IMG/VR virus record: IMGVR_UViG_3300037010_003311
Span: 124,001 to 188,000 of that record
DNA: 64,000 nt
Strand: one strand, 5' to 3'
Below the pieces are notes generated by a model. The model saw only the letters and a list, made by a program, of their open reading frames with translations. It made no database searches and was not told the origin of the DNA. A program made the position numbers and the translations under genes. Each line of letters begins with the position of its first letter. The first letter of the stretch is position 1. Of this stretch, positions 11,072 through 63,638 are shown in pieces.

Positions 11072-11118
11072 AATATCTTTATTTGAGCGACAGGAAAAGT
11101 TACTTAGGCCATGTGGCC
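11072..11118. repeat. 47-bp direct repeat, copy downstream of endonuclease gene
   Basis: AATATCTTTATTTGAGCGACAGGAAAAGTTACTTAGGCCATGTGGCC is identical to 12744-12790. Confidence 0.95.
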
Positions 11119-11120
11119 AT

Positions 11121-12686
11121 TTAATCTAATTTATATGTAATAGACCCGGAATCATAAATTATAGCAAATTTATTATCTATTATAGTTTGAAGTTCATTAT
11201 TTGTAGATAAATTTTTTTCAAAACCAAATTTAGTTTTATGATTTTGAAATTCTGATTCGGAAAATAAAACATTACTATTATTGAGATGCCAATAAAAAGG
11301 TTCTGGTTCATTAATTGTAAATTCTTTAAAACCCAGCGTTTTATATAAATTATCGTTATCCCAACGTCTATCTATAGTAGTTTTAATTGACCCAACATAT
11401 TTTTCTCTAAAATTATTTAGTAATTTGCTAGCAGCCTCTAGTATATTATAACCAAGTTTGTTACAAAATCTTACTAATAACCATTCGTTGTCATTATCTG
11501 AGTTATTAAAAACCATTAAACTCATTAATTCTGCATCTTTATATAAACCATACGCTAGTGTACAATTGGTATAACCTTGTAAATGGTTATATTCTAGAAA
11601 AGTTTTTGCTTCTAGCTTAGATACATTCTTAATTTTTAAATCATTAGCATCAAGTTTTATACCTTTATCTAAAGTACCAGTGATTATAGATTTCCAGATA
11701 TTTTGTTTAATTGGGTTAATCCATTCTGTTTCAAATATATGTAATAGTTTTATGCCTTTGCTTTGGCAGGCATTGGTCTTTTGTAAGTGCCTAGATTGAC
11801 ATGTATATAATTGAGTCTGTTTAGTACATGATGCTCTTTTCTCAGACATATAACTGTGCCAATAAATACCATTATATTCAATTGCTAGTTTATAGTCTGG
11901 TACGTAAATATCTAATTCGTATGGTTTAATAACATCTCTTATATTTTCTTGGATTAAACTTTCTGGGATATTTATTTTAATTATATCAAGTACCTGCTTT
12001 TCAGAAATACTAATAAATGATAACCGGTTATAATCAATTTTTAATTCTTTAATTTTTTGATGTGTCCTAGCTTCCGAACAATTGAAATAAGTTTGGCATT
12101 TGATATAATCAAATCGTTTATCTTTATCAAGAAACTCTTCTATCCAGAATTCTTTATTATTCCAATTTTCAAAATTTAATAAATGACTATTTTTAAAATG
12201 CGAGCTTCCATATTTTTCTAAATTTTTATCCCTCATTTTAGATTTGGATGCTTCTAGCATATTTGGGTGCTTAACTCCATATATAAAAAGACAGGTTTCC
12301 CTACGTTTTCGAATAACTTCCGGGTTACTGGCAGCACAATTATAACCGGTCCGTTCAAAATAAGTTTCTTTTGCCTTAATTCTGGTTTCTTTTATTTTAC
12401 TTGGGTGATTAACCCCATATTTTTGCATACAAGTATTAATAGTATTGGTTTGTTTAATCCGAGCTCTGATTTCTTTAGTATTTTGCTTACAATTGAGATG
12501 CCCACATGTTAAACCATATCCCCGAGTGGTAGTAAAGAACTTTCTTATATTATTACAATCCATATTCAAGCATTTTAAATTCTCCAGATTTAAATTAAAT
12601 TTAAACTGATATTTAATAGCTTGTTTAATATCTTTAATTGTAATATCTGGAAATTGTGTTAATAATTCTTCTTCGGTAATGGTCAA
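11121..12686 (-). CDS. Free-standing homing endonuclease-like protein (Hef-like): Zn finger + KYG repeats + PD-(D/E)xK domain + NHLQG C-terminal domain
   Basis: C-x4-C...C-x4-C; ~23-aa KYG/YG repeats; ELDIYVPDYKLAIEYNGIYWHS nuclease motif; C-terminal NHLQG...RFC...YDSG domain. Confidence 0.8.
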   Translation of the reverse strand: MTITEEELLTQFPDITIKDIKQAIKYQFKFNLNLENLKCLNMDCNNIRKFFTTTRGYGLTCGHLNCKQNTKEIRARIKQTNTINTCMQKYGVNHPSKIKETRIKAKETYFERTGYNCAASNPEVIRKRRETCLFIYGVKHPNMLEASKSKMRDKNLEKYGSSHFKNSHLLNFENWNNKEFWIEEFLDKDKRFDYIKCQTYFNCSEARTHQKIKELKIDYNRLSFISISEKQVLDIIKINIPESLIQENIRDVIKPYELDIYVPDYKLAIEYNGIYWHSYMSEKRASCTKQTQLYTCQSRHLQKTNACQSKGIKLLHIFETEWINPIKQNIWKSIITGTLDKGIKLDANDLKIKNVSKLEAKTFLEYNHLQGYTNCTLAYGLYKDAELMSLMVFNNSDNDNEWLLVRFCNKLGYNILEAASKLLNNFREKYVGSIKTTIDRRWDNDNLYKTLGFKEFTINEPEPFYWHLNNSNVLFSESEFQNHKTKFGFEKNLSTNNELQTIIDNKFAIIYDSGSITYKLD

Positions 12687-12743
12687 ACTAAATTCCTATA
12701 TATTTATTACTTTAATTATATACTAAAATTCTGAATAATAATA

Positions 12744-12790
12744 AATATCTTTATTTGAGCGACAGGAAAAGTTACTTAGGCCATGTGGCC
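12744..12790. repeat. 47-bp direct repeat, copy upstream of endonuclease gene
   Basis: Identical to 11072-11118. Confidence 0.95.
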
Positions 12791-12799
12791 TAAGTAACT
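12760..12799 (-). terminator. Intrinsic terminator after tail tube gene, with CCTGTCG tail
   Basis: AGTTACTTAGGCCA/TGGCCTAAGTAACT stem followed on the minus strand by a T tract and CCTGTCG. Confidence 0.8.
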
Positions 12800-12833
12800 A
12801 TCTGTTACAATGTTCTGGTCGGGATAATTAAAA

Positions 12834-13613
12834 TTAACCAACAATACCATTTTGAACATTAGTATTTGAAACCAACTTATTGTAAATTAATTCAGTATTA
12901 TTGAATATTTTTGCACTGTTTAATATTGCTACAGCTGTAGCAACTACAGTATCGTTAGTTTCAGTTAATGGATAACCATCAAATCTATACTGCACTTGCG
13001 GACGAACAATGGAGTTATCCATAATATTACTATCATACGCGCTGTTAAGGTCAGTTAGACATTGAACACCATCATAGTATGCAACTTTAATTATATCACC
13101 TGTCGTCCATACTTGTGGGGAACCACCAACTTGACGAGCTACTGGTTTAGTTTGAATAACCATACAAGTTCCTTTATATTCAGAACTTGAAAAGTCTTTG
13201 GCAGCAATTGATGTACCAAGATATGGATCAAGGTATCCAGTCCAAGTACGGTGAACTCTCATAATTGGAGCTCCCCAATAATCTTTATATTGAATACCAA
13301 ATTCTCGAGTGATAGTTTGGCCAGCGAGGAAACTTGCTCCACCAGCTCCACCCATACCTTGTGTATCTTGTAGCATCATCTGTCTATCAGCATGAGGTGT
13401 ATAACCTTCAGCTGAAGATAATAGGTAGTTTTTAGCATTAGATCTGGTTATACCATCTTCCGTGAATAGAACATTTGGTAATCCAAAAAATACATAAAAA
13501 TAACCTTTAATAAATGGGTGGTCGGACGCAGTACGACCAGCCCCACCCGTATAACGATCAGCAGACGCTGTTGATGAATCTTTTATAGCAATTGTATTTA
13601 AAAAAGAGCTCAT
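12834..13613 (-). CDS. Tail tube protein
   Basis: 259 aa directly downstream of the sheath; tube-like pattern (W..Y.DP..G, YKG, terminal FDG). Confidence 0.72.
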   Translation of the reverse strand: MSSFLNTIAIKDSSTASADRYTGGAGRTASDHPFIKGYFYVFFGLPNVLFTEDGITRSNAKNYLLSSAEGYTPHADRQMMLQDTQGMGGAGGASFLAGQTITREFGIQYKDYWGAPIMRVHRTWTGYLDPYLGTSIAAKDFSSSEYKGTCMVIQTKPVARQVGGSPQVWTTGDIIKVAYYDGVQCLTDLNSAYDSNIMDNSIVRPQVQYRFDGYPLTETNDTVVATAVAILNSAKIFNNTELIYNKLVSNTNVQNGIVG

Positions 13614-13632
13614 TTTTTTCCTTTCTTATTTA

Positions 13633-15966
13633 TTATATAACGATAATTGGAATATCGATTACTTCGATAGTGCCAATAGGATTAACAGTAATACTCAAGC
13701 GGAGTGTGTATGTTGACTCGTTATAAACTGCATTAATATTTACAGAACTAAAAATACCATCTTTAAAGTTTTCATTAGAAACTTTATATTTCGACATGTA
13801 CTTATCCACACGTTCAACAGCAACATCAACTACATTAGAAGTCTCTTTACGTTGGACTAAATCTTTCAATAATTTAGGAAGATCTTTTCTTATACGGTGA
13901 ATAACTTTAACCACAGAACCTCTACTTAATTTGGAAGCTTTTTTATAAGCGGTTAATTGATCTATGAAATAAGTACCTTCTGGTTCAACTATGATAGTAT
14001 TAATTTGCATATTTCTTAATTTTGCAATTTGTGATGCACCTGGTTCATAAGCTAGGTTCTGACGAGTAGCATTCAGTAAACCACCTTTAGCGATATTAGC
14101 AACTGGTTCAGTTATACTATAATCTCTATCAGTTTTCAAGTGAGCCATTAAAGCATAATAAGAGGTTGGCATACGTAGACGCTGACCGTTAGTTAAACTG
14201 ATATGCTCTTTGTTAACTTGTGAACTATAAATCATAGTGTTATAAGAACTTAGGCTAAGTACCGAGTTTCTGATATCATAATCAGATTGTACAGCAGTTT
14301 CGTTGCTAGTGTTTGTACCAATATTATAGTTTACTGGTGGAACACTTACTAGTGGCATTGTTATACCAATACTATCACCAAATAATGTAATAGCATTAAT
14401 GACGTCAACATTGTTAGACCAATCTGGAACATAATCAAAATCATATTTTGGATACATTACTTCACGAATCTCTTTTGTATTATTAAAGAAATCAACTAGG
14501 ATATCTCTAGCTTTACAGGTTTGAGCCATTGATGGTAAATATAAGTATCCAGCGCTATTAAATAATGGATTAGTAGCTGTAGCACTATCGTCTTGTCCAC
14601 TCTCCATTTTAATATTGTGGTTTAGTAAATAGTTATAAATATACCAGCGTAAGAAACCAACTTGGTTATAAACTAGTTTACCCTCAGTATTTATAGTTAC
14701 TTGATAGTAAGAGTTATCACCATCAAAATATTTTATAGATGGAATATCTGTTGTAGCTGGATTAGCTATTAAATTATAACCAAGAGTCACTTTCGTTGCC
14801 GGAACTGAATTAGCATCACTCACACCACCAACTGGAACCCATACTAATTCTGCATAACGAATAGTACCAGTATTATCAACGAATGAAATGTATTGGATAT
14901 AATCTTTTGTATCATAATAAAAATTATCTGATTTAACTTGACGTGATATACTATATACTGTAGCTAATGAACCATCAGCTTGAGCAACAATATCACTCGT
15001 TCCAAATATTTCATATTTTTTACCAGCATCAATAAGTATTAAGCGGTTTGCTTGCCCCATTTCTGAATTCAATTGATCAATAGTTGCATATTTTCTTAAT
15101 TCATCACGGATCGTGCTTGAATTTAGATTAACGTCTGCATCGATATCAATTGCCATACTAATGAAATCATTTTTTAGTTTAGAGATTTGATTAACAAAAA
15201 GCTCTTCACCATTATACATATCCACTATTATTTTACCAGTTTTGTTATCTTGATCAATTAATGAAAAAGTAAACGAGTCACTCATAGATTTAACAGTACC
15301 ATTAGAATTTTCAAAAATTCCAGTTTTAATATAGTTAAATTTATAGTTAGTTTCACCATCGCGGTTACTATCTAGTTTTTCATAATCAGTAGCATTACTA
15401 AAAGTCATGAAAAGGTCATTGTACCCGATACCAGGTGCTTGAGCCAAGATACTAAATGCAATTCTACTATTATTAGGGTTTGGTATTGTTTTAGTATGAT
15501 CATGTGGATCAGTAATATAATCAGCACTTAAAGAATCAATAACTGAAACGTATTCATCTTTACTATTAATCTCTTCAAATGTTGAAACTTTAATAACTTT
15601 ACTATTACTATTATTATCTAATGCTTCATCTGCTAACTGATCGTACTTAGATGGTGCATATTTAGTTTTATCAATAGATATACAGTAGTTTGCATACGTA
15701 GCATCTGGTGATTTTAAACAGTAAGTTAAAACTTTATTAGTGAATTGGAATGCATCGTTTGCATACTCTAATCCAAGTCCATAACGATTAACATCAATCG
15801 CACCGTGTTTGTATTTTAGTTCAGATGGAGTTGTACACCAATTAAAACCTTTTCCGTACTTAGCGAATAAAGGTATAAACGGGACTCTACCACCAGCTAC
15901 AGATACTTCAGTAGTCGGTTGATCAATTACCGACGTTGTAATACCTGGTATTATATCATTTGCCAT
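13633..15966 (-). CDS. Tail sheath protein
   Basis: N-terminal IPGITTSVIDQ; C-terminal EPVANIAKG, QINTII, DQLT..K.SKLSR, VNPIGTIEVIDI, typical of contractile sheaths. Confidence 0.87.
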   Translation of the reverse strand: MANDIIPGITTSVIDQPTTEVSVAGGRVPFIPLFAKYGKGFNWCTTPSELKYKHGAIDVNRYGLGLEYANDAFQFTNKVLTYCLKSPDATYANYCISIDKTKYAPSKYDQLADEALDNNSNSKVIKVSTFEEINSKDEYVSVIDSLSADYITDPHDHTKTIPNPNNSRIAFSILAQAPGIGYNDLFMTFSNATDYEKLDSNRDGETNYKFNYIKTGIFENSNGTVKSMSDSFTFSLIDQDNKTGKIIVDMYNGEELFVNQISKLKNDFISMAIDIDADVNLNSSTIRDELRKYATIDQLNSEMGQANRLILIDAGKKYEIFGTSDIVAQADGSLATVYSISRQVKSDNFYYDTKDYIQYISFVDNTGTIRYAELVWVPVGGVSDANSVPATKVTLGYNLIANPATTDIPSIKYFDGDNSYYQVTINTEGKLVYNQVGFLRWYIYNYLLNHNIKMESGQDDSATATNPLFNSAGYLYLPSMAQTCKARDILVDFFNNTKEIREVMYPKYDFDYVPDWSNNVDVINAITLFGDSIGITMPLVSVPPVNYNIGTNTSNETAVQSDYDIRNSVLSLSSYNTMIYSSQVNKEHISLTNGQRLRMPTSYYALMAHLKTDRDYSITEPVANIAKGGLLNATRQNLAYEPGASQIAKLRNMQINTIIVEPEGTYFIDQLTAYKKASKLSRGSVVKVIHRIRKDLPKLLKDLVQRKETSNVVDVAVERVDKYMSKYKVSNENFKDGIFSSVNINAVYNESTYTLRLSITVNPIGTIEVIDIPIIVI

Positions 15967-15980
15967 AAAGGTCTCCTTTA

Positions 15981-16000
15981 AATATTTTGCGCAAAATATT
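15981..16000. promoter_or_regulatory. Perfect 20-bp palindrome next to the sheath RBS
   Basis: AATATTTTGCGCAAAATATT. Confidence 0.4.
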
Positions 16001-16091
16001 GTATTTTTTTGGGTTTGAATATTTCTGACGGTTTACTATAAACCTATTCCATAAAAGGCTATAAAACTTATACCGAGGTATAAGTAGTGGC

Positions 16092-16859
16092 TTATACCAA
16101 AATAAACCACTCGATCATAAGATCGTCACTAGCTTCTAACCACTTATTTAAAGTAGTGAATCTAGCAAAAATTGAACTATCAGCATTAAATTTTTCAGCA
16201 TCCGTAGCACCGAATGGTACATCTGGATTACCAATTTCGGTATTAACCATTAATAGAGAGGCTTCATTAAATCTAAATACCCTAGTTGGATAATTTGGAT
16301 TTTGATTACATTCATCTGCTAACACATACATAGTAAATTTAACAGTAGTTTTTGCACTGATATCTTTGAACACTTGATTTCCAGTGCTATCTATAGTACT
16401 GATATGATGTGTTTCATCAACTATCTCTATCTTACCACCATCGGCAGTAATAAGTTTTGATTTACCATTATGTATATAACGATAAATACCATTATCTAAA
16501 CTATTACCAGCACTAAATGGGACCGGATCAAATAAATCAGTATCATCATCAAATGGCCCTATTTTAGATGGTGTCTGACCAACATCACAACCACCAGAAC
16601 CAACGCGGAAGTATCTTATATTAAATTCTGCTCCATTTTCTTGCCCGACCAATTTTTTTAATAATTTTTCGCGACCCGCCAATACAACAAGATTGTTTTC
16701 AAGGATTGGTTCTCCCGTTCTAAGATTAGTAACTCTTACCCTACCAATCTCAGAATGGTTATGATCTAGATCTGGCCAAGTAGCCCAGGTCTCGTCGGCT
16801 GGAGAAAGATTACTACTATCTATTTCGGTAAATGTGGTTAATCTATTTTTTCTTTGCAT
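16092..16859 (-). CDS. Putative baseplate / fibre-attachment protein
   Basis: NLVVLAGR...F.VGSGG...NEASL...FARFT motif series seen in myophage baseplate proteins. Confidence 0.5.
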   Translation of the reverse strand: MQRKNRLTTFTEIDSSNLSPADETWATWPDLDHNHSEIGRVRVTNLRTGEPILENNLVVLAGREKLLKKLVGQENGAEFNIRYFRVGSGGCDVGQTPSKIGPFDDDTDLFDPVPFSAGNSLDNGIYRYIHNGKSKLITADGGKIEIVDETHHISTIDSTGNQVFKDISAKTTVKFTMYVLADECNQNPNYPTRVFRFNEASLLMVNTEIGNPDVPFGATDAEKFNADSSIFARFTTLNKWLEASDDLMIEWFILV

Positions 16860-16875
16860 TTAATTTCCTTAAAAT

Positions 16876-19113: not shown

Positions 19114-19152
19114 AATTTTCCTTTCAATCTAAATATCCATGACCGTATGGAT

Positions 19153-20130: not shown

Positions 20131-20160
20131 AATGGTTCCTTTCTGATTCGATCATCTAAT

Positions 20161-22158: not shown

Positions 22159-22245
22159 AAATCACCATCCATATAAAATTACCAATTTGTTTTTGTATAG
22201 AAATTTGGTACAGTTTGGTCTCTGCCATTACTTCGATCGCAGATG

Positions 22246-22270
22246 AAAGATTTTTTTAACGACATGAAAA
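22246..22270. repeat. 25-bp direct repeat downstream of endonuclease pair
   Basis: AAAGATTTTTTTAACGACATGAAAA, 24/25 identical to 24903-24927. Confidence 0.85.
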
Positions 22271-22293
22271 AGTTGGGCCACCTGGACCACAAC

Positions 22294-23601
22294 TTAATCT
22301 ATTTTAAAAACAAAATTACCGGAATCAAAAATAGCTTTATAACCATTAAGGTCTATAACTAGTTCTTTTTCAGTTAAATTTTCTTTATATACTTCAAGCT
22401 TTGTTTCAAGCTTATGTTTTTGGAAACTCTGTCGACTATGAAGTTTTGGTAAATTGTAATTATCAGTAATGTCTTCTCGCCAATAAAAATAATTTGGCTC
22501 AGCAACCTTTTCTTCATGGAATCCAATCTGTCTATATAAGTTTCCTTCTGACCAACGCCTATTTGCATATGATTTAATACTACCTGTATATTTAGCTTTG
22601 AATGCTTTGAGTAACCTGCTTGCACCACCTACTACACTATAACCTTTTGCATTACAAAACCGCATAAGCTCCCAATCTGTATTCTTATCAAATCGGCTTT
22701 TACTAAATGTCATAATAGATACTAATTCTTTTTGGTAGAATAAAGCAAATCGAATAAGTGCTTTACCAGTTCCTTGCAAGTGGTTACTTTCAACGAACTG
22801 ATTGCTTATTTTTAATAAACCTTTATGAGCCCGGTTGCTAGAATCAATCTCTATAATATCACATTTCCGAGCATAAATTCTATTAGATAAACCAAGAGCA
22901 TTTATTATCATGCTTTTCCAAATAAGTTGTTTGTTAGGATGTAGCCATTCTATATCATACATATATAGTACTTTTATACCAGTTTCAAGGCCACGATTAG
23001 TTGTATTCAAAAAATTATTTTTTTTGGATTTAAGATTACTTCTGGCTTCGATAATTGATTCGGCATTTGGAGTGATTGGGGTAAGCTTAGTAGCTAATTC
23101 TTTACTAATAAGGCTATCATTCAATAACTCGACTATTACTATCGAAACTTGTTGGTCTGGGAAATATATATCATTATCTAAAATATTAGCCTTATCACCA
23201 GCTAATACATAGTTAAATGATCTAGCCTCCAGCCACTGTACAATACTAGCAATAATAGTTTTTTTATTATTATATGTAGCCTCAGCTGGTAGAATATTTG
23301 GGATGGTTGGTACCTCTGGTTCCACAGCTTGAGTTATATGTTTCTTTTTAGATATAGTATTTACAATTTTAGTGATTTTCATATCTTTAATAGTACTAGC
23401 CATTTTAGCTTGGCAAGAATCACTACAGCAATATTTAAAACCAGCATCCGAATTTTTCCAAGCTTTTAAATTACCGCAATCCGGATTAATGCATTCTAAA
23501 TTATCTAAAGTTAATTGGAACTTATCCTTGTATTTTAGAATTCGTTTTATATTGAATTTATCTATGTTTGGATAATACTCTTTAAGTGTCGCTTCCGTCA
23601 T
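22294..23601 (-). CDS. Hef-like endonuclease paralog with degenerate nuclease motif
   Basis: Likely start ATG 23601 (AAGGGA RBS, 1 nt after the upstream stop). Shared N-terminal Zn-finger domain, no KYG repeats, DNDIYFPDQQVSIVIVELL in place of the nuclease motif, complete NHLQG domain. Confidence 0.75.
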   Translation of the reverse strand: MTEATLKEYYPNIDKFNIKRILKYKDKFQLTLDNLECINPDCGNLKAWKNSDAGFKYCCSDSCQAKMASTIKDMKITKIVNTISKKKHITQAVEPEVPTIPNILPAEATYNNKKTIIASIVQWLEARSFNYVLAGDKANILDNDIYFPDQQVSIVIVELLNDSLISKELATKLTPITPNAESIIEARSNLKSKKNNFLNTTNRGLETGIKVLYMYDIEWLHPNKQLIWKSMIINALGLSNRIYARKCDIIEIDSSNRAHKGLLKISNQFVESNHLQGTGKALIRFALFYQKELVSIMTFSKSRFDKNTDWELMRFCNAKGYSVVGGASRLLKAFKAKYTGSIKSYANRRWSEGNLYRQIGFHEEKVAEPNYFYWREDITDNYNLPKLHSRQSFQKHKLETKLEVYKENLTEKELVIDLNGYKAIFDSGNFVFKID

Positions 23602-23602
23602 T

Positions 23603-24790
23603 TTATCCCTTTTTAATTTTGAGTTCGTGTGGGTCATCTGTTCGCAGCTGTAATTGTCCAGAATCATATACCTGGAATTGAGTAGATTCAGTTTTAATTT
23701 TTGGCTCAATTATTAAATATTCTTCTAGGTTTATAGATTCTAGATAGCACCCATCGTCCAAAACATATGAAAAAGCCACTTCCGTAGCCCTTGGTTCTAA
23801 TTTAAATTTTATTGCATTCTGGATTTTAGAAATATTTTTTTCATAAGTATCTGTTTCATAAAGGTGTACTAAGCTAATACCAGCAGCAATACAAGCTAAT
23901 GATTTCTGCTGATGGTAGTACTTATCTGTACCAGCTTCAGTACTATGCCAATATAAACCATTATATTCCACGGCAAGTTTTAATGCCGGAATATAAATAT
24001 CCAACTCTAGTGGTTTAATTATGCTACGGTTGTTAGTATTGACCTCGTAGCCTAGTTCTTGTATGTAGCTAGCAAGCTGCTGCTCTTTTAAGCTGGAACC
24101 TTTAAACTTTTTATATTGTATGTTTAATCGCTTAGCTCTTTGCCATAAATGACCAGAGGTACAATTAAAGTGGTTCATACATTTTTCAATATTTAAATAA
24201 CCATCAACCATTAAAAAGTTTTCTGCCCAATATTTAGCATCATCCCAATGTACAAAGTTAGTAATATGCTTATTTAGATGGTTTTTACCAGCACCATATT
24301 TATTAGAGTTTGTATCTTTTGCTTTCAATATTGCTTCTGGATTCGAGGTAGTATGTTCATAACCAGTTCTAGTTAAATAAGTTTGTTTAGCTTTTAATCT
24401 GGTTTCTTTAATTTTACTAGGATGTTCAACTCCATAATTTTTAAGAGATGTTAATTTCTTCTTCTCTTTAATTAATGGGCTACAGCTATTGTATTCAAAT
24501 CCAAATCGTTTGAGGTTAGTAGCTTTTTGTTTAGAAAACATTATTTCTAAAATTTTGGGCTTAGAAACATTTTTACAAATGTCGCTACCACAAGTATGAC
24601 CGAATCCTTGCGTAGAATTTTGCCACTTCCGTAACAAACCGCAACTAGGATTAATACATTTAATATTGGCTACAGTATATTGGAACTTAGTTTGGTATTT
24701 GATGGATCGTTTCAAATCTATTAGCTTGGCATCAGGGAATTGGGCTCGTAACATTTCTAGGGTTAATGACATTGTTACAGAATCTGACAT
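23603..24790 (-). CDS. Homing endonuclease-like protein (Zn finger + KYG repeats + PD-(D/E)xK), short C-terminus
   Basis: ELDIYIPALKLAVEYNGLYWHS; lacks the NHLQG domain. Confidence 0.8.
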   Translation of the reverse strand: MSDSVTMSLTLEMLRAQFPDAKLIDLKRSIKYQTKFQYTVANIKCINPSCGLLRKWQNSTQGFGHTCGSDICKNVSKPKILEIMFSKQKATNLKRFGFEYNSCSPLIKEKKKLTSLKNYGVEHPSKIKETRLKAKQTYLTRTGYEHTTSNPEAILKAKDTNSNKYGAGKNHLNKHITNFVHWDDAKYWAENFLMVDGYLNIEKCMNHFNCTSGHLWQRAKRLNIQYKKFKGSSLKEQQLASYIQELGYEVNTNNRSIIKPLELDIYIPALKLAVEYNGLYWHSTEAGTDKYYHQQKSLACIAAGISLVHLYETDTYEKNISKIQNAIKFKLEPRATEVAFSYVLDDGCYLESINLEEYLIIEPKIKTESTQFQVYDSGQLQLRTDDPHELKIKKG

Positions 24791-24827
24791 ATATTTCCTT
24801 ACTAGAATATTGTTACAATCTACCTTT

Positions 24828-24838: not shown

Positions 24839-24902
24839 CTAATTAAAATAGTACTGGGACTATAAACTGTAACAATATCCCTGTCGTAGGTGTTGCTAAA
24901 TA

Positions 24903-24927
24903 AAAGATTTTTTTAACGACAGGAAAA
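24903..24927. repeat. 25-bp direct repeat upstream of endonuclease pair
   Basis: AAAGATTTTTTTAACGACAGGAAAA. Confidence 0.85.
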
Positions 24928-24953
24928 TTTTAGAGGCTTACGCCTCTAAAATT
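24917..24953 (-). terminator. Intrinsic terminator after major capsid gene
   Basis: AATTTTAGAGGC-GTAA-GCCTCTAAAATT stem with GNRA loop, then TTCCTGTCG. Confidence 0.8.
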
Positions 24954-38007: not shown

Positions 38008-38056
38008 AAAAATCGCCTTCGTAATAAATTACCGATTTGTTGAATTAGTATTTTAA

Positions 38057-38096
38057 CGACAGGAAAAAGCTACTATGTTGTACAACATAGTAGCTT
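38057..38096 (-). terminator. Intrinsic terminator separating accessory block from virion module
   Basis: Perfect 30-bp palindrome AAGCTACTATGTTGTACAACATAGTAGCTT ending in a T tract and CCTGTCG on the minus strand. Confidence 0.8.
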
Positions 38097-40560: not shown

Positions 40561-40643
40561 ATGACAAGAAAAATAGATTAACCAAGCAGTTGTTGGATCT
40601 GATGGGGAAGAATGGATTGTCATCAACTGCTTGGTTAATCTAT
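40561..40643 (-). terminator. Terminator/attenuator immediately upstream of GGDEF RBS
   Basis: Perfect 20-bp stem (40573-40592/40624-40643) followed by TTTTCTTGTCA, a variant of the TTTTCCTGTCG tail. Confidence 0.7.
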
Positions 40644-42231: not shown

Positions 42232-42336
42232 CTTATGTCCTCCCTTTTAATTAATTACATAAATATTTCTATATTAGAAAAAATAGTAAAACAACTATTG
42301 ATAAAATGAGGTACGTCTCAAAAATTAGGATTTTCG

Positions 42337-42402
42337 CGACAGGAAAACTTGCGACTACTAACATAAAGTGAGGAGACAATATGTTAGCAGTTGCAAGTTT
42401 TC
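42337..42402 (-). terminator. Terminator of tRNA transcript with C/U-rich loop
   Basis: ~22-bp stem, loop TTGTCTCCTCACTT, ending TTTTCCTGTCG. Confidence 0.75.
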
Positions 42403-56766: not shown

Positions 56767-56814
56767 TTTTACTCCTCTATTTTCTTTAACCTTTATTTTT
56801 AACGCGTGAGAAAT

Positions 56815-56838
56815 ATAGCGGTGGTTTCCCACCGCTAT
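56815..56838. terminator. GC-rich hairpin upstream of helicase
   Basis: ATAGCGGTGG-tttc-CCACCGCTAT (GAAA loop on the minus strand). Confidence 0.45.
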
Positions 56839-57073
56839 TTTAAACCTTTTGATTTTGCCAGAATATAATCATCGATTATGGTTGATTGATTATATATACC
56901 ATTTGTATTTCTAGAAGCATTTGAACCACGCTCCATCATAAAGACCGAGACCATTCTCACTTTTGATAAAATATATTTTAACATTGTTGGTGAATCCTTT
57001 TCTTTTAAGAATTACAAGTTGCTTATATATTTCTATTATTACTATTTAATAGTTTTAGACCGATGCATGATTG

Positions 57074-57916
57074 TTAATCATTTAAAAAATCTTTTATAAG
57101 AATATCATTTTCCGTTAGCCAATATTCATTTAAATCGTTGGATGTGTACCTATCATAAATACTATCATTTTTATATTCATCTTTCACAAATATAACGTTC
57201 AAATTTTTTTTATAGAATTTAGCTTCCGGGATCAATCTATTATTAGTATCTAGCGCACCATTATGAACATAAAGAATATTATTAACCGTATCATATATAT
57301 TTAAATTTTGAGTATGTGTCTTAAAAATATAATCGGGTGGTAAAAATGCTCGTATATCGTTAACGGTTGATGACAAGCTAGAAACATAGGTTTTATTATT
57401 TTTTATATCGGATTGTAGTTCTTTAAATATATCGAATTTTAATTTAAGACGAGTTCGTTTAAAAAATTTCTGATAATCATAATAACCATATATAGTAGTG
57501 ATTGGATAGGGAATACCCAATTTCATATCTTTAGTATTATTACAATAAAGATATTTAATACCATTTGGGTTGAGCCAATAAATTTCATTATAGCTTTTTA
57601 CATCAAGAAATAATACTTTATCCAATTTCAAAGAATAACAATCAAGTCTAGAAATAAATTTAATATTATCTAGCACTTGTTCTATGATTTCCGGTTTATA
57701 TTTATTATTATAAAGTGTAAGAACTTTTTCTTTGATTTTAGTATCATTTGGATCGCAAACTATATAAAAATTTATCGTCGCATCATTATTTTTGCCAATA
57801 ATTTGGAATAATTGGTAAAAATATTCAAATGTATAAAGTAAGGTGCCATTAATTTGATTATATTTTTGCCAATAATAAACCACTCCATATTTTATCTTTG
57901 AATCAGATACTAACAT
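57074..57916 (-). CDS. Putative GT-B glycosyltransferase-like protein (paralog of 53080-54066)
   Basis: INGTLLYTFEY ~ ICGHFFEVIEY; DTNNRLIPEAKFY ~ DCSPRMIAECKYF; likely start 57916. Confidence 0.5.
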   Translation of the reverse strand: MLVSDSKIKYGVVYYWQKYNQINGTLLYTFEYFYQLFQIIGKNNDATINFYIVCDPNDTKIKEKVLTLYNNKYKPEIIEQVLDNIKFISRLDCYSLKLDKVLFLDVKSYNEIYWLNPNGIKYLYCNNTKDMKLGIPYPITTIYGYYDYQKFFKRTRLKLKFDIFKELQSDIKNNKTYVSSLSSTVNDIRAFLPPDYIFKTHTQNLNIYDTVNNILYVHNGALDTNNRLIPEAKFYKKNLNVIFVKDEYKNDSIYDRYTSNDLNEYWLTENDILIKDFLND

Positions 57917-58562
57917 AACCAGCTTTTGATATCCAATCTTTTTTAAATCTATTATAAATCTCAGTTGATTCTTCCAATGTATCAGCGTCACGAATCTCAT
58001 TTTTTAGTTTACAATAATTATCGTATGCGGCAAACGCTCTAGATATTTCATCCTTATTCATTAGATACTTTTCTAGAAGATCAATAAGTTCATCATTTTC
58101 TTTTTCTAATATTTCAATATACTTTTCTTCTTTATTTGCATCAGTAATAAAATAACCTTGTTCCATAAGACTATTATTTAGTACTATAAATTCATAATAG
58201 GTAAGATTTGCAACTGTATTAATTTTTTGATCAAAGAATCTTTCTGCTTCAAGTAATATGTTTTGCTTCGCTTGTTCAAGCAATACATCAACGTGTATCT
58301 CTGGTAAAGAATCTTTTACAACTATATCATATGGCTCGAGTTTTGTTAAACCTCTAAATTCGGTTATCAATACCGCTTTATCAAGTTTTAGGTATTTGTC
58401 TACTTTTGTAGCACTTGCTTTAGTTAATGGTGCAATCCTATACCCAATATCATAATCCTTAAGTTTACTACTAGTTTGATCAATGATTTCGATTATTTGA
58501 TATAGGCCAATCTGTATTTTTTTACATAATGCAAATTTTGCTGCATTTTGATTTTTTTCCAT
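57903..58562 (-). CDS. Hypothetical protein in radical SAM operon
   Basis: Likely start ATG 58562 (AAGGA RBS); helical, acidic C-terminal half. Confidence 0.7.
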   Translation of the reverse strand: MEKNQNAAKFALCKKIQIGLYQIIEIIDQTSSKLKDYDIGYRIAPLTKASATKVDKYLKLDKAVLITEFRGLTKLEPYDIVVKDSLPEIHVDVLLEQAKQNILLEAERFFDQKINTVANLTYYEFIVLNNSLMEQGYFITDANKEEKYIEILEKENDELIDLLEKYLMNKDEISRAFAAYDNYCKLKNEIRDADTLEESTEIYNRFKKDWISKAGYVSI

Positions 58563-59868
58563 TCGAATTTTCCTTAATTTTAATTTTACCAGCGTTCCAT
58601 AAGGCGCGGGTTTTGTGCACCATCCGGCTTTCTGGTTCAAGTATTTTATAATCTACACCAAGTGGATAGCAACCAGAATCCAAGTCATATATATCTATCA
58701 CAGTGTCTGGATCATAAGCTATAAATTTATCTATTTGCTCTTTCCAATTGCTTAAGTTTATATCTTCATATAACTGAAGCAACCGAATACCGGCCTCTAA
58801 GCAGGCTAAAGCTTTTCGTTGGTGTCGGTACTTACAAAAATCGTAATCTAGTTGTTGTGAGCTGATCCCTATGGTTTCGTGGTAGCTATGCCAATAACTA
58901 CCATTCCATTCTATTGCCAATTTTAAGCTAGGTATCCAAATGTCTAGCTCCTGATTTGGTATTATGGTCCGTTCATTTGCTACCGCTGGAACACCTAAGC
59001 TTTCTAAATATGGTATTATAGCTTGTTCCTGTAAACTAGTTGCTGCGGTCTTGGTATATTTTATACCAAGTTTTTTAATTTGGGTATGGGTAGCTGGTTG
59101 TTCACAATTAAAATAATCCATACATGTTATATAATCAAAATAATTATCGTTTGTTATAAAATTTCTTTTCCAGAATTCGATATCGTTCCAATATTTAGCA
59201 TTAGTATAATGTTTACGTTTTGGATTACTTACCCCATATTTTTCGATATTATTTTTAATCATCTTTTCTTTAATATCTTTATTTTGTAAAGGTTTTGATA
59301 CACCATACTTAATTAAACTTGATTCCTGTTGTTTACGTTTAATTTCTGAATTAGAATTTGGACTTTTGGTACCATATTTTTCGATATTATTTTTAATCAT
59401 CTTTTCTTTAATTGCCGGATGTTGCATAGAAGTTGTATAACCATATATTTGTAAACAAGCTTCTTGTTGCTTACGCTTAATTTCCGGGACCGAATTCGGG
59501 CTGCTGGTACCATATTTTTTAATACTGTTTTGAACCATTTTTTCTTTAACCACTAAACTTTGAATAGGGTTTTCGACACCAAATCTATCTAAACTAGTTT
59601 GTTTATATTTTATTTTTCTTAATCTAATTATTTCCGGCCTCATTATATTATAGCATTCGGTTGAACAACAATATTTGAGCCCAGATTTTGTAGTACCTTT
59701 CGATTTCAAATTTTTACAATCCTGATTTAAACACTTTATATTTTCTAAAGTTAACTCAAATTTTAATTGATATTTTACTATAAAATTTAATTGTCGGATT
59801 GTTAAATTTTTTGCTTCTGGATACGCATCTTTAATTAATTCTGGGGTTAATTTATGTTTCTGTAACAA
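58522..59868 (-). CDS. Homing endonuclease-like protein (Zn finger + six KYG-type repeats + PD-(D/E)xK)
   Basis: ELDIWIPSLKLAIEWNGSYWHS; exact 41-bp internal duplication at 59234-59274 and 59372-59412. Confidence 0.8.
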   Translation of the reverse strand: MLQKHKLTPELIKDAYPEAKNLTIRQLNFIVKYQLKFELTLENIKCLNQDCKNLKSKGTTKSGLKYCCSTECYNIMRPEIIRLRKIKYKQTSLDRFGVENPIQSLVVKEKMVQNSIKKYGTSSPNSVPEIKRKQQEACLQIYGYTTSMQHPAIKEKMIKNNIEKYGTKSPNSNSEIKRKQQESSLIKYGVSKPLQNKDIKEKMIKNNIEKYGVSNPKRKHYTNAKYWNDIEFWKRNFITNDNYFDYITCMDYFNCEQPATHTQIKKLGIKYTKTAATSLQEQAIIPYLESLGVPAVANERTIIPNQELDIWIPSLKLAIEWNGSYWHSYHETIGISSQQLDYDFCKYRHQRKALACLEAGIRLLQLYEDINLSNWKEQIDKFIAYDPDTVIDIYDLDSGCYPLGVDYKILEPESRMVHKTRALWNAGKIKIKENSNGKKSKCSKICIM

Positions 59869-60773: not shown

Positions 60774-62083
60774 TAATTCTCCTTTAACATTTTATGTAGT
60801 ATTCTATCTATACTACCAAAGCTTTTATAGAATATACAATTATTGAATTCATTATCGTTATTATATAGATTTTGTATCTGGGTGCTTGATGACTCGGGTA
60901 TTTCGGATGTACTCTGGTTACCAGTTCTAGCTTTATTTAATGAATAGATAGCAGCTGGGCACATCGCACAATACGTAGCGGCACAATCCGTACAAACTGA
61001 GTTCAAATTTTCAACATTATAATTTTCAGCTATTTTATAACGTTCTAAGAAAGCTACTATTTCATTGTATCCAGTTTCCATCAATGGCTCCATAAAATTT
61101 AAACTCATTTTTAAATCTTTGCTATCTTTAATATATAAAGAACCATGGCAGAAGTTTAATGAACCATCCACGTTAAGAGCAATAAGATTTGAACCAGCCG
61201 AACAATGGCTGCGATGACTAAGATTATTATAACCTGAGGTACCAGCCTTAAACCAACTCATAATAAACGAATTATACTTTTTATAAAATTGGTATTCTTT
61301 TTTAACTATTTCCGTAATTGCGGTAGTAAAATGTTTTACTAACTCTAGTTTTTTATTTACCGGTAAAATATTAACATAATCCAATGTTGGTGAGTACTGT
61401 ACATTAATATTCTTTAAATTTGGGTATTTAACCCGTATTAAATTGTCTATCTGATAGAACTCATCCCAAGTGTCGATTAAAGTATCTACCGTCTCTAGTG
61501 CTTGTAATGGTATCGTAGCTTTTAGGCTAAGAAAGTTCAAACCCGTAGTACCGGTACTACCAGTATCACAATAATCTTTTACTATATTTAAAAAATTATT
61601 CAATACTTCCTTTTTAGTGGATGTCCCGGTTTTGGTTAACCGGTATTGATCATTAATTACTTTACCATCATACGATACTTGGATAGTTAAACGATTTAGT
61701 ATATCCAATGATTTAAAGTGATCCAGTATCCGGTTAAGGTTCTTTGCATTATAACCATTTGTATAAATCATGAACTTAATACCATAATTTAGTTTAAAAG
61801 CGTTTGCTGCTCTAATTATGATATCTGGGTTAAGTGTAGGTTCTCCACCCCAGAATGTTATACATATGGAATCAAACCGCTCCATAAAGTAACTACTCCT
61901 TTGTAAAAATTTAATATTTTCAAAAATGGTCTCATAATCTGTAAGCTTGGTTCTATCAGTCTTTTCCCCCTCGAAGCAGTATGTACAAGCTAAGTCACAT
62001 AATGCCGTGGTGGTAATCTCAAATACAAACTCTCTAAGTACTTTGGGTTCAGGTTGTATGATTGATTCTACTATCTCTTTCAT
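60773..62083 (-). CDS. Radical SAM/SPASM maturase
   Basis: CDLACTYC, FWGGEPTL, TNG, VSYDG; CSAG...FCH...CTDCAATYCAMCPA. Confidence 0.93.
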   Translation of the reverse strand: MKEIVESIIQPEPKVLREFVFEITTTALCDLACTYCFEGEKTDRTKLTDYETIFENIKFLQRSSYFMERFDSICITFWGGEPTLNPDIIIRAANAFKLNYGIKFMIYTNGYNAKNLNRILDHFKSLDILNRLTIQVSYDGKVINDQYRLTKTGTSTKKEVLNNFLNIVKDYCDTGSTGTTGLNFLSLKATIPLQALETVDTLIDTWDEFYQIDNLIRVKYPNLKNINVQYSPTLDYVNILPVNKKLELVKHFTTAITEIVKKEYQFYKKYNSFIMSWFKAGTSGYNNLSHRSHCSAGSNLIALNVDGSLNFCHGSLYIKDSKDLKMSLNFMEPLMETGYNEIVAFLERYKIAENYNVENLNSVCTDCAATYCAMCPAAIYSLNKARTGNQSTSEIPESSSTQIQNLYNNDNEFNNCIFYKSFGSIDRILHKMLKEN

Positions 62084-62382
62084 TTTAAATCATTTAGAAA
62101 GTTTTCTGCCATTTCCGTTAATTTGGAAAGATTAACATCCGGTTCGGACTCTATATTAGAAGACATTATAGATTCTAAAATGTCTTTCATCTGTTCAGGA
62201 TCTATTCGGTAATCATTATCATCTACTTGCTTAAGTAACGCTTCCAAGGTACTCAGTAAAAACATATCTAAAGTGCGGTCTTCATCTTTTATATTAGCAT
62301 ACGCTAAAGCTATACCAACTGCGGCAAGAAAATACTTTTGATTTTTCTTTTTTTGTAACTCTATTTCATTTAACGGTTTCAT
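62080..62382 (-). CDS. Small helical hypothetical protein coupled between two SPASM enzymes
   Basis: 100 aa; ATGA overlap with the downstream gene. Confidence 0.7.
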   Translation of the reverse strand: MKPLNEIELQKKKNQKYFLAAVGIALAYANIKDEDRTLDMFLLSTLEALLKQVDDNDYRIDPEQMKDILESIMSSNIESEPDVNLSKLTEMAENFLNDLK

Positions 62383-62383
62383 T

Positions 62384-63526
62384 TTAACTCTCCATTTCTA
62401 TTATTGTTTTTAGTTGATTTTTTATATTTGTATTTGTTGTACCCTGCGATATTATGGCTAAAGCGTACTGATTTAACCTTTTGAATATATTGCACAGGTT
62501 TTCTTCTGGTACGAAGTCGTTTGTGACAATCTGTGCTAAACAACCTTTATCACATACATTTTTAATACTGCATGCCTGGCAAGTAGGATTGTTTATAGCC
62601 TGGTCATAATCTTTGACTGTAAGTTTTTTATCCATGAAGGAGTTACATGAATATATTTCATTATCTGGTCCTATAAGTAACTTATTCGATGGGGTGGAAT
62701 TATCAGAAACTGGTAGAACACCACAACTTGAAATACTAACTGATTTCATTTTGTAAATTATATTTTTAACAATCCATTCCCGGAATATACTTGGTATTCT
62801 ACCAGAATACATAGGGCTCAAAATAAATTGATATAATTCCAATAACTGCTGGAATAGTTCAGATACTGATTCATTATCCCAAATACCATTGTCGCGTACT
62901 AAAGTTAAATGTGGTTCTAAATTATAATTATCCTTAATCCATCTATAATTCTTTAAAATAGATACCCGCTTAATACCAGTTGGATAAATCATTGTATGAC
63001 AAAATGGTGCACAATACTTTAGTAAAGTTTTAAATTCTGGAGCCTGGTATTGTTCCAATACCCTAGTATTACCGCGCTGTGGTCGCTGTATATCAGTCCA
63101 TAAACCATCGAATGAAAATATGACTTGCACTGGAGACTTACGATATGTTTTGTCCGTTAATCGTTTTAAGTTTTCTTCCGTTGCTAGAAGCATATTACTG
63201 GGTAACTTATAATATACCTGATATGGTGGATGATCTGATGCCGAGAATAGTTCATCTAAACCATCTAGTATTTCTAAAATAAGATTGGTCTTCAATAATG
63301 GTTCTCCACCAAAGAAATCAATATATATTTTATTAGTATTTAAAACTTGGGTTGCTGGTTGCTTTGGATGGTTTAGCTTTTCTAAGTATTGTTGTATGAA
63401 CTCTATGGTTCGATGAGGTTCAATTGCCTGGTGGTTGCTATTATCAAAATTATAACAATAACTACAATTTAGATTACATTGTTTGGTTAGCATAATAGTT
63501 ATATAAATATTTTCTTTCACGTACAC
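62384..63526 (-). CDS. Radical SAM/SPASM maturase
   Basis: CNLNCSYC, FFGGEPLL, SFDG; CG...YSC...CQACSIKNVCDKGC...C. Confidence 0.93.
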   Translation of the reverse strand: MYVKENIYITIMLTKQCNLNCSYCYNFDNSNHQAIEPHRTIEFIQQYLEKLNHPKQPATQVLNTNKIYIDFFGGEPLLKTNLILEILDGLDELFSASDHPPYQVYYKLPSNMLLATEENLKRLTDKTYRKSPVQVIFSFDGLWTDIQRPQRGNTRVLEQYQAPEFKTLLKYCAPFCHTMIYPTGIKRVSILKNYRWIKDNYNLEPHLTLVRDNGIWDNESVSELFQQLLELYQFILSPMYSGRIPSIFREWIVKNIIYKMKSVSISSCGVLPVSDNSTPSNKLLIGPDNEIYSCNSFMDKKLTVKDYDQAINNPTCQACSIKNVCDKGCLAQIVTNDFVPEENLCNIFKRLNQYALAIISQGTTNTNIKNQLKTIIEMES

Positions 63527-63604
63527 TCTTTTGGTTTTTGATAATTTAATTAATATTTCTATAATATAGTTTATAGTGCTTGTGCTAGATCTGTGTTGAT
63601 CCAG

Positions 63605-63638
63605 CGACAGGAAAAGTGATTGGGCATAAAGCCCAATC
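63605..63638 (-). terminator. Intrinsic terminator after tail-fibre gene
   Basis: GATTGGGC/GCCCAATC stem followed by ACTTTTCCTGTCG. Confidence 0.75.

What the first reader, a model, noticed from the sequence alone, without database searches (positions are those of the whole stretch)
11088..63615. Phage-specific terminator tail: hairpin-TTTTCCTGTCG at eight sites
Seen: plus-strand CGACAGGAAAA at 11088, 12760, 24917, 38057, 42337 and 63605, with variants at 22260 (CGACATGAAAA) and 40562 (TGACAAGAAAA). Each abuts a hairpin, mostly of unrelated sequence, at the end of a minus-strand unit. Known: intrinsic terminators conserve only stem and U tract. Inference: the GC-rich heptamer is a sequence-specific signal, such as a pause/termination element for a phage-modified or phage-encoded RNA polymerase, a protein-binding site or an RNA 3'-processing site.
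Basis: partly seen in the sequence, partly recalled or inferred. Interest (0 to 1): 0.6.

Follow-up and report, generated by a model that had tools for sequence, protein, structure and literature searches.

The report
Jumbo-phage terminators with conserved tail
A giant phage that carries its own RNA polymerase ends many of its transcription units with a hairpin of any sequence followed by a fixed TTTT-CCTGTCG tail, a layout much like the mapped terminators of phage phiKZ; this points to a termination signal read by the phage's own polymerase, but no RNA data exist to prove it.

Summary
In the full 226,657-bp phage genome about 22 such elements exist. All 15 copies of TTCCTGTCG sit directly 3' of a hairpin, and none is antisense.

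The layout is: stop codon (or tRNA cluster), then a hairpin of free sequence, then T(2-4)-CCTGT[C/G][G/A]-N3-A-run, then separate promoter-like motifs (TATAGAAATA or AACAAAT-N3-TA), then RBS and ATG. So the element is the terminator module, not a promoter.

The phage encodes a split beta/beta' multisubunit RNA polymerase. Metagenomic relatives (capsid protein 48-77% identical) keep the tail behind unrelated hairpins. One lineage uses CTTGT[C/G] instead.

phiKZ terminators, whose RNA 3' ends were mapped, have the same plan. I re-derived this here: hairpin, TTAT, N, YYGT.

Verdict: a clade-specific variant of the known jumbo-phage conserved terminator. It probably acts as a pause or termination signal for the phage polymerase. 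That mechanism is inferred, because no RNA data exist.

Side finding: three homing-endonuclease genes and two small ORFs are bracketed by 47-60-nt duplicates of the element.

The parts
11088..11118 (-). Terminator element downstream of homing endonuclease 1. Tail TTTTCCTGTCG is at 11098-11088; a truncated hairpin (GGCCACATGGCC plus its 3' arm) is at 11099-11118. It is the downstream copy of a 47-nt direct repeat.
12760..12799 (-). Terminator element after the virion-protein gene 12834-13613. It has a 13-bp hairpin plus the tail TTTTCCTGTCG, and is the upstream copy of the 47-nt repeat.
22260..22295 (-). Variant element (tail TTTTTCATGTCG) after the tandem homing-endonuclease genes. It shares a 28-nt tail repeat with the 24917 site.
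24917..24951 (-). Terminator element directly after the major capsid gene (24952-26607): hairpin plus TTTTCCTGTCG-TTAAAAAAA. Relatives L029, L030, L032 and L034 have an element with the same tail core and different hairpins at the same place.
38057..38096 (-). Terminator element after gene 38101-38769, with a 13-bp hairpin. An AACAAAT promoter-like motif follows at 38035-38041, ahead of the 1914-aa gene.
40562..40642 (-). Variant element: a long-range hairpin plus TTTTTCTTGTCA, which has the core form of the G001 lineage. An RBS and ATG follow within 20 nt.
42337..42397 (-). Terminator element ending a tRNA cluster (tRNA-Gln, Val and Ala at 42854-42411): an imperfect 50-nt hairpin plus TTTTCCTGTCG.
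63605..63638 (-). Terminator element after gene 63640-63948: hairpin GATTGGGC..GCCCAATC plus ACTTTTCCTGTCG. A TATAGAAAT motif follows at 63555-63563.
11121..12686 (-). Homing endonuclease gene 1 (phrog_3339, HNH type, Pfam DUF7487), bracketed by the duplicated element.
22294..24790 (-). Two overlapping homing-endonuclease ORFs (23603-24790 and 22294-23709), lying between the capsid-gene terminator and the variant element.
38035..38041 (-). Example of the separate late-promoter-like motif AACAAAT(N3)TA. Others in the window are at 10696-10702, 22185-22191 and 27619-27625.
42265..42273 (-). Example of the separate AT-rich promoter-like motif TATAGAAAT(A). Others in the window include 10885-10893, 24830-24838, 41240-41248, 44086-44094 and 63555-63563.

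Best explanation
The hairpin plus T(2-4)-CCTGT[C/G][G/A] (then N3 and an A-run) is this phage's transcription terminator. It is tuned to the phage's own non-canonical multisubunit RNA polymerase. Shown: the element closes transcription units. Inferred: the nascent RNA hairpin forms, the U tract is short (2-4 U), and the conserved pyrimidine-to-G step (CCT|G, 6-8 nt past the stem) acts as a pause or release signal that makes up for the weak U tract. Also inferred: the rest of the tail and the downstream A-rich block lie in the polymerase's downstream DNA channel, or are read by a polymerase subunit or factor. Separate promoters (TATAGAAATA and AACAAAT-N3-TA) then restart transcription for the next gene. 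Where no such promoter follows, as upstream of two homing endonucleases, the next gene would be expressed only by read-through.
For: Position: the hairpin starts at or within a few nt of the upstream stop. The stop-to-core distance is 22-74 nt for most of the 20 intergenic sites in G000 (6, 194, 207 and 287 nt at four) and 13-51 nt for most in relative G001 (four at 80-440), whereas the distance to the next start is 16-210 nt or more. One element ends a tRNA cluster. Orientation: all ~22 are co-oriented with the genes. Coupling: no CCTGTCG lacks a hairpin beyond the ~5 copies expected by chance. Not a promoter: two other motifs behave like promoters. Of the AACAAAT copies, 15 of 25 are intergenic and 14 are sense within 150 nt of a start; in G001 all 22 intergenic copies are sense. 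TATAGAAAT occurs 30 times. Both occur with and without the element, and AACAAAT lies at a variable distance from it (6-29 nt). Of the 19 gaps that hold the element, 16 also hold one of these motifs downstream. Polymerase: Rpb2_6 (E=2.7e-25) and a split Rpb1 across two adjacent ORFs. No sigma70 region 2 was found, and sigma70-like promoter matches are at chance (124 against 119 +/- 10). Conservation: G001 (capsid 52-54% identical) has 17 sites of hairpin plus TT-CTTGT[C/G]nTTnAnTTCA. L029/L030 (75-77%) have CCTGTCG, and L032/L034 (48-49%) have CCTGTCC or CCTGTGC, always behind different hairpins, including at the same place after the capsid gene. Precedent: RNA 3' ends in phiKZ map to hairpin-TTAT-KYYGT (PMC10914365). 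My scan of phiKZ found 101 hairpins followed by TTAT and then G/T-Y-Y-G-T, for example TTATGCTGT.
Against: There is no RNA evidence: no RNA run holds this genome, so the 3' ends are unmapped. The pause mechanism rests on general knowledge of bacterial polymerases (the Y-1/G+1 elemental pause), not on a test. Conservation reaches about 10-15 nt past the core (the A-run in G000, TTCA in G001), which is more than a simple pause needs. AR9 and Staphylococcus phage Machias also encode such polymerases, yet their tails are TTAT-type without YYTGT, so the tail is not universal. Only 3 elements lie in the + strand half of the genome. Some strong intergenic hairpins lack the tail.
Confidence: 0.72

Rival explanations
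1. The tail, with or without the hairpin, is a promoter or start region for a phage polymerase, as N4 uses hairpin promoters and as phiKZ late promoters centre on TATG (which occurs in phiKZ's TTATG terminator tails).
For: At three sites (G000 4624, 61645, 121951) the next start codon lies 16-17 nt after the core, which leaves no room for another promoter. In phiKZ, 54 of 101 tails read TTATG, which contains the late-promoter core TATG (PMC7598289). Weak conservation continues downstream of the core.
Against: Two other motifs already behave as promoters and occur independently of the element. The element is tied to the upstream stop, not to the downstream start. It follows a tRNA cluster. Stems of 8-16 bp plus a T-run are terminator-like, whereas N4 promoter hairpins are 5-7 bp (own knowledge). 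No copy of the motif exists without a hairpin.
Confidence: 0.1
2. The element is an RNA processing or stability site. Transcripts run through it, a nuclease or RNA-binding protein recognises UUUUCCUGUCG next to the hairpin, and the hairpin then protects the new 3' end.
For: The sequence is conserved immediately 3' of a stable hairpin. Conservation extends beyond the region expected to be transcribed if the polymerase stopped 7-9 nt past the stem.
Against: No candidate nuclease was identified. The phiKZ counterparts were classed as intrinsic terminators from 3'-end mapping. A short T-run directly after the stem is typical of termination.
Confidence: 0.1
3. The element is mainly a DNA-level recombination or cassette boundary, or a homing-endonuclease target, comparable to the T4 promoter-stem-loop cassettes or to integron attC sites.
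For: Five or six near-duplicate pairs bracket single inserts: HEG1 (47 nt), HEG3 (52 nt), HEG2a/b (28-nt tail only), orf92 and orf133 (57-60 nt). One contig from another sample joins 11109 to 12788 and so lacks HEG1.
Against: Most elements are single copies with unique hairpins. Both flanking copies and all other copies stay intact in a genome with seven endonuclease paralogs, so the motif is unlikely to be the cleavage target. The endonucleases are old paralogs (28-39% identity) and each duplicated the local terminator. This looks like a secondary use of a repeated regulatory element. The HEG-less allele rests on one low-depth, divergent contig.
Confidence: 0.08

Closest known systems
phiKZ / 201phi2-1 conserved intrinsic terminators (5'-BCCYCCCCHWWDGGGRRGGBYTTATKYYGT-3'; Putzeys et al. 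2024, PMC10914365; PMC11512511)
   Same: Both belong to a jumbo phage with its own split multisubunit RNA polymerase. In both, a stable hairpin is followed directly by a 4-nt T-rich tract, one base, then YYGT. Compare phiKZ TTAT-G-CTGT or TTAT-G-TTGT with TTTT-C-CTGT here and TTTT-C-TTGT in G001. Both have tens of copies per genome at gene ends.
   Different: In phiKZ the stem itself is conserved (CCYCCCC/GGGRRGG), the tract is TTAT, and many sites are bidirectional; G and T of YYGT are only 45-63% conserved there. Here the stems are all different, the tract is TTTT, CCTGT is invariant (20 of 20), a further CG and an A-run are conserved, and all sites are unidirectional. RNA 3' ends are mapped in phiKZ but not here.
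Canonical bacterial intrinsic (Rho-independent) terminators
   Same: A GC-containing hairpin directly after the gene, followed by T residues.
   Different: The T tract is only 2-4 nt and is followed by a conserved GC-rich heptamer. In 8000-27900 a standard scan (at least 5 T in 8) flags only one of the four elements there.
T4-type PeSL cassettes (promoter-early stem-loops flanking mobile ORFs; Arbiol et al. 2010, recalled, not read here) and lambdoid 'morons'
   Same: Repeated regulatory stem-loop units bracket single inserted genes, here homing endonucleases and small ORFs. The orf133 repeat carries both the terminator and a promoter-like motif.
   Different: Here the repeats are terminator-first units tied to a phage polymerase signal. 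Most copies are not associated with inserts.
T7 RNA polymerase class II termination/pause signal (ATCTGTT; recalled)
   Same: A short sequence-specific signal containing CTGT that stops a phage polymerase.
   Different: The class II signal works without a hairpin on a single-subunit polymerase. No such polymerase was found here, but that search was uninformative because its controls did not ring.

Membership tests
phiKZ-type conserved terminators of jumbo phages with their own multisubunit RNA polymerase | The phage encodes split beta/beta' RNA polymerase subunits | tested here: met
   PF00562 at G000 84117-85661 (E=2.7e-25). Rpb1 domains 1 and 2 lie on two adjacent ORFs, 77460-78782 and 78851-80740. 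PHROGs names them RNA polymerase beta subunit.
phiKZ-type conserved terminators of jumbo phages with their own multisubunit RNA polymerase | A stable stem-loop at the 3' end of transcription units, co-oriented with the genes | tested here: met
   Hairpin energies are -12 to -28 kcal/mol. The hairpin abuts a stop codon or a tRNA cluster. All ~22 are co-oriented with the genes.
phiKZ-type conserved terminators of jumbo phages with their own multisubunit RNA polymerase | A short T-rich tract, one base, then YYGT directly after the stem | tested here: met
   TTTT-C-CTGT in G000 and TTTT-C-TTGT in G001, against TTAT-G/T-YYGT in phiKZ as re-derived here.
phiKZ-type conserved terminators of jumbo phages with their own multisubunit RNA polymerase | The exact TTAT tract | tested here: not met
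   The tract is TTTT or TTT (ATT in two sites); none of the 20 sites has TTAT directly before the core.
phiKZ-type conserved terminators of jumbo phages with their own multisubunit RNA polymerase | A conserved stem sequence (CCYCCCC...GGGRRGG) | tested here: not met
   Stem sequences are unrelated between sites, and between relatives at the same place after the capsid gene.
phiKZ-type conserved terminators of jumbo phages with their own multisubunit RNA polymerase | RNA 3' ends map at the element | not testable with these tools
   The only runs that hold the sequence are DNA metagenomes.
Canonical intrinsic terminator | A U tract of about 6-8 residues after the stem | tested here: not met
   Two to four T, then CC. 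Only 1 of the 4 elements in 8000-27900 passes a rule of 5 T in 8.
Promoter of the phage polymerase | A fixed short distance to the downstream gene start, and occurrence independent of the upstream gene end | tested here: not met
   The distance to the start is 16-210 nt or more and variable, while the distance to the upstream stop is tight. The motif never occurs without the hairpin. Other motifs fill the promoter role.
Rfam families | A match to a curated RNA family | tested here: not met
   Only tRNA hits in the window at gathering thresholds.

The most novel reading that the evidence does not exclude
The post-hairpin tail (T-rich tract, N, YYGT) is a termination code read by the non-canonical jumbo-phage multisubunit polymerases, whose sigma-like subunit stays attached during elongation. 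On this reading it is shared from phiKZ to this uncultured clade and drifts with polymerase lineage (CCTGTCG, CTTGTC, TTATGYYGT). That would insulate phage transcription units from host-type termination rules. Because the unit is repeated, it would also serve as the landing and duplication site for homing endonucleases and small gene cassettes.
Probability: 0.3. Interest if true: 0.6.

Novelty: new variant of a known kind. Interest (0 to 1): 0.45.

Why it matters
How the sigma-less, split multisubunit polymerases of jumbo phages terminate is essentially unstudied. phiKZ and 201phi2-1 show conserved terminator motifs, but their stems are conserved too, so the roles of stem and tail cannot be separated there. 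In this clade the stems vary freely and only the tail is fixed, and it changes between lineages. That isolates the tail as the sequence-specific part and gives natural variants (CCTGTCG, CTTGTC) for swap experiments with matching polymerases. In practice, the tail plus the two promoter-like motifs allow operon maps for a large uncultured jumbo-phage clade straight from sequence. The bracketing of homing endonucleases by duplicated terminators suggests how selfish genes insert without disturbing neighbouring operons.

Tried and rejected
- Megablast of 24 kb against GenBank phages found no match. Capsid tblastn found only weak hits to Staphylococcus jumbo phages.
- An exact scan of IMG/VR for TTTTCCTGTCGCNNAAAAA gave 5 hits. 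None has a hairpin and the contigs are unrelated, so these are chance matches.
- The exact TTCCTGTCG is absent from relative G001. At first this looked like non-conservation, until a k-mer count of hairpin tails revealed the CTTGT[C/G] variant.
- A profile search of IMG/VR with the capsid alignment returned only the same relative.
- The T7-like polymerase search (PF00940) was uninformative because its controls did not ring. PHROGs and Pfam on large ORFs found no single-subunit polymerase, but not all ORFs were scanned.
- AR9 and Machias show no YYTGT tail enrichment, so I rejected the idea that the tail is universal among such phages.
- The supplementary TTS tables of the phiKZ paper are not held, so exact 3'-end positions relative to YYGT could not be read.
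- I considered the tail as an inverted copy of the late-promoter motif and as an anti-Shine-Dalgarno-like pairing partner of downstream RBSs. Spacing is not fixed and most sites have no RBS nearby, so I rejected both.
- I considered the motif as the endonuclease cleavage target and rejected it, because all copies stay intact in a genome with seven endonuclease genes.
Full report
**1. Observation**

The plus-strand 11-mer CGACAGGAAAA is exact at 11088, 12760, 24917, 38057, 42337 and 63605, and has one mismatch at 22260. That is 7 matches against 0.76 expected, and none of 100 shuffles reached 7. The looser variant at 40562 is also present. All ORFs of 100 aa or more lie on the minus strand apart from three short ones inside minus-strand genes.

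Read on the minus strand, every site is a hairpin, then 3-5 T, then CCTGTCG (or CATGTCG / CTTGTCA), usually followed three bases later by an A-run. The hairpins are unrelated in sequence, with two exceptions. Sites 11088 and 12760 share a 47-nt repeat. Sites 22260 and 24917 share a 28-nt repeat of the tail only.

**2. The whole genome**

The window is bases 124001-188000 of a 226,657-bp virus record with 32% GC. Genes run on the + strand up to about 98 kb and on the - strand from there to the end.

- All 15 copies of TTCCTGTCG follow a hairpin.
- Of 20 CCTGTCG copies, 16 follow a hairpin; about 5 copies are expected by chance from base composition.
- With a strict criterion (hairpin dG <= -12 kcal/mol ending within 6 nt), 13 of 20 qualify, against 3% of random positions.
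- Counting CCTGTCA and CCTGTGG forms there are 20 clean sites. Variants (CATGTC, CTTGTCA, CCTGCCC) bring the total to about 22-24.
- All are co-oriented with the local genes: three on + (4624, 61645, 63636) and the rest on -.
- The aligned logo is ..TTTT CCTGTCG y n a AAAA... CCTGT is invariant in the 20 sites, which were collected by that core.

**3. What the element is attached to**

The hairpin begins at, or a few bases after, the upstream stop codon. The stop-to-core distance, hairpin included, is 22-74 nt for most of the 20 intergenic sites in G000; four lie outside that range, at 6, 194, 207 and 287 nt. The distance from the core to the next start codon ranges from 16 to over 80 nt.

The 42337 element follows a tRNA-Gln/Val/Ala cluster, not a protein gene. 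That ties the element to transcription rather than translation. In the - strand half, 19 of 45 intergenic gaps of at least 50 nt hold an element.

**4. It is not the promoter**

Two other motifs behave as promoters.

- AACAAAT(N3)TA: 15 of its 25 copies lie in the 8.5% of the genome that is intergenic, and 14 of these are sense and within 150 nt of a start codon. In relative G001, 22 copies are intergenic and all 22 are sense. It resembles the AR9 late promoter AACA-(6N)-TA/G (PMC5312081).
- TATAGAAAT(A): an AT-rich motif with 30 copies, many of them 25-45 nt before an RBS. It resembles the AT-rich early promoters of such phages (PMC7598289).

Both occur with and without the hairpin element, and AACAAAT lies at a variable distance from it (6-29 nt). 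Of the 19 gaps that hold the element, 16 also hold one of these motifs downstream. So the intergenic layout is terminator, then promoter(s), then RBS. Sigma70-type promoter matches are at chance level, 124 against 119 +/- 10.

**5. The polymerase**

The genome encodes an Rpb2_6 domain protein (E=2.7e-25). It also has an Rpb1 homologue split over two adjacent ORFs. This is the hallmark of the phiKZ/AR9 group of jumbo phages (PMC7598289). No sigma70 region 2 was found. The search for a T7-like polymerase was uninformative.

**6. Relatives**

The capsid protein has 111 homologues (38-79% identical) in metagenomes, which indicates a large uncultured clade.

- G001 (181,622 bp, capsid 52-54% identical) lacks TTCCTGTCG. 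It has 17 sites of hairpin plus TT-CTTGT[C/G]-n-TT-n-A-n-TTCA, again abutting stops.
- Directly after the capsid gene, L029 (75%) has a different hairpin plus TTTCCTGTCGTTAAAAAAC.
- L030 (77%) has two tandem hairpins there, each with TTTTCCTGTCG.
- L032 (49%) has TCCTGTCC and L034 (48%) has TTTTCCTGTGC.
- L031 and L036 use T-run-CGGC-T-run there, and L031 has CTTGTCG and CTTGTGG elsewhere.

So the tail core YYTGT[C/G] is kept while the stems turn over completely. This shows selection on stem structure and on tail sequence.

**7. Comparison with known systems**

ONT-cappable-seq of phiKZ mapped 133 termination sites. Sixty-one of them share 5'-BCCYCCCCHWWDGGGRRGGBYTTATKYYGT-3', that is a hairpin, then TTAT, then KYYGT (PMC10914365). 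Phage 201phi2-1 has a similar motif (PMC11512511).

I re-derived this from the phiKZ genome. I found 101 GC-rich hairpins followed within 3 nt by TTAT. After TTAT come G (54) or T (25), then Y, Y, G (45), T (63). Examples are TTATGCTGT, TTATGTTGT and TTATGTCGT. This is the same plan as TTTT-C-CTGT here and TTTT-C-TTGT in G001.

The differences are as follows. phiKZ conserves the stem and uses TTAT, and many of its sites are bidirectional. Here the stems are free, the core is invariant and extended by CG, and the sites are unidirectional.

AR9 and Staphylococcus phage Machias have AT-rich TTAT or TTTAT tails with no YYTGT enrichment. The tail therefore differs between lineages rather than being universal.

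**8. Mechanism**

Shown: the element's position, orientation, obligatory coupling to a hairpin, independence from the promoter-like motifs, conservation across relatives, the phage's own polymerase, and the phiKZ precedent.

Inferred: the U tract is short, so something else must slow or release the polymerase. The invariant pyrimidine-to-G step (CCT|G or CTT|G in this clade, YY|G in phiKZ) lies 6-8 nt past the stem, where bacterial enzymes release RNA. It matches the Y-1/G+1 core of the elemental pause consensus (Larson et al. 2014; Vvedenskaya et al. 2014; recalled, not read here).

The sigma-like subunit of these polymerases is reported to stay attached (PMC7618050). It could therefore read a DNA signal during elongation, but this is speculation. 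Weak conservation 10-15 nt further downstream may reflect downstream-duplex contacts or promoter-proximal A-tracts.

**9. Homing endonucleases**

Seven paralogous endonuclease genes (phrog_3339, DUF7487; 28-39% identical) are present.

- HEG1 (window 11121-12686) is bracketed by a 47-nt duplicate of the local terminator. The repeat begins inside the hairpin and ends 16 nt after the core.
- HEG3 (G000 120525-121928) is bracketed by a 52-nt duplicate of the same kind.
- The tandem HEG2a/b lies between the capsid terminator and a second element that shares only the tail.
- Two small ORFs (92 and 133 aa) are bracketed likewise. The orf133 repeat includes the AACAAAT motif.

In a second mat sample, one low-depth divergent contig joins 11109 to 12788 and so lacks HEG1. 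This is weak evidence. I read these pairs as insertions that reuse and duplicate the regulatory unit, not as the element's primary function. The motif is unlikely to be the cleavage site, because every copy stays intact.

**10. Verdict**

It is a clade-specific variant of a kind already described for phiKZ-like phages, so novelty is moderate. The missing piece is RNA 3'-end mapping or in vitro termination with the phage polymerase.

Noticed in passing
window 10696-10702, 22185-22191, 27619-27625, 38035-38041 (- strand); genome-wide list: AACAAAT(N3)TA is strongly intergenic and sense-oriented upstream of genes, and occurs only in the - strand (structural) half. In relative G001 all 22 intergenic copies are sense. 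It resembles the AR9 late promoter AACA-(6N)-TA/G and is probably this clade's late promoter.
   Followed up: partly
window 10885-10893, 24830-24838, 41240-41248, 42265-42273, 44086-44094, 63555-63563 (-); 8660-8668, 22196-22204 (+): The AT-rich motif (T/A)(A/T)(A/G)TATAGAAATA has 30 copies in the genome and 17 in G001, many of them 25-45 nt before an RBS. It is a candidate early or virion-polymerase promoter. Some copies point antisense.
   Followed up: partly
window 8594-8697 and 10856-10959: A 104-nt inverted repeat (85% complementary) flanks the large-terminase gene (8735-10660). Each arm carries a TATAGAAAT motif, so one arm would drive antisense transcription into the 3' end of the terminase gene.
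   Followed up: partly
window 11121-12686, 22294-24790, 58522-59868; G000 56039-57403, 85900-87039, 120525-121928: Seven divergent homing-endonuclease paralogs (phrog_3339 / DUF7487) are present. One sits directly after the RNA polymerase beta gene. Relatives also carry DUF7487 genes right after the capsid gene (L033, L034, L036).
   Followed up: partly
window 10673-12900 (table 5c): Contigs in runs X2 and X3 join 12900 to 10673 with 28 other letters in between. A related phage therefore seems to have a much shorter junction between the virion-protein and terminase genes, lacking both the endonuclease and the terminators.
   Followed up: no
window 42411-42854 (- strand): A tRNA cluster: tRNA-Gln(ttg), tRNA-Val(tac) and tRNA-Ala(tgc).
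   Followed up: yes
G000 61700-63361 (L023 1700-3361), with related copies near 1.8, 33.8, 35.2 and 38.4 kb: A multi-copy paralogous gene family (phrog_5070/7964, starting MVEKKYKLGES...) carries conserved internal hairpins (AAAAGAGTTCGATGGGAGAACTCTTTT). Two adjacent copies lie between the elements at 61645 and 63636.
   Followed up: no
L031 11620-11680; L036 5445-5510 and 13875-13930: A second tail type follows hairpins in some relatives: T(6-8)-CGGC-TTTT(T). It occurs after the capsid gene in L031 and L036. L031 has CTTGT-type tails elsewhere, so two terminator classes may coexist.
   Followed up: no
phiKZ NC_004629 (L052-L065): In 54 of 101 phiKZ hairpin-TTAT tails the next base is G. This gives TATG, which is the published late-promoter core with G as +1. 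Terminator tails and late start sites may therefore overlap in phiKZ.
   Followed up: no
G000 65961-70022, 73389-75017, 113344-115617: Other annotations seen: a 1353-aa protein with an rIIA-like N-terminal region, a RecJ-like exonuclease, and a ribonucleotide reductase large subunit.
   Followed up: no
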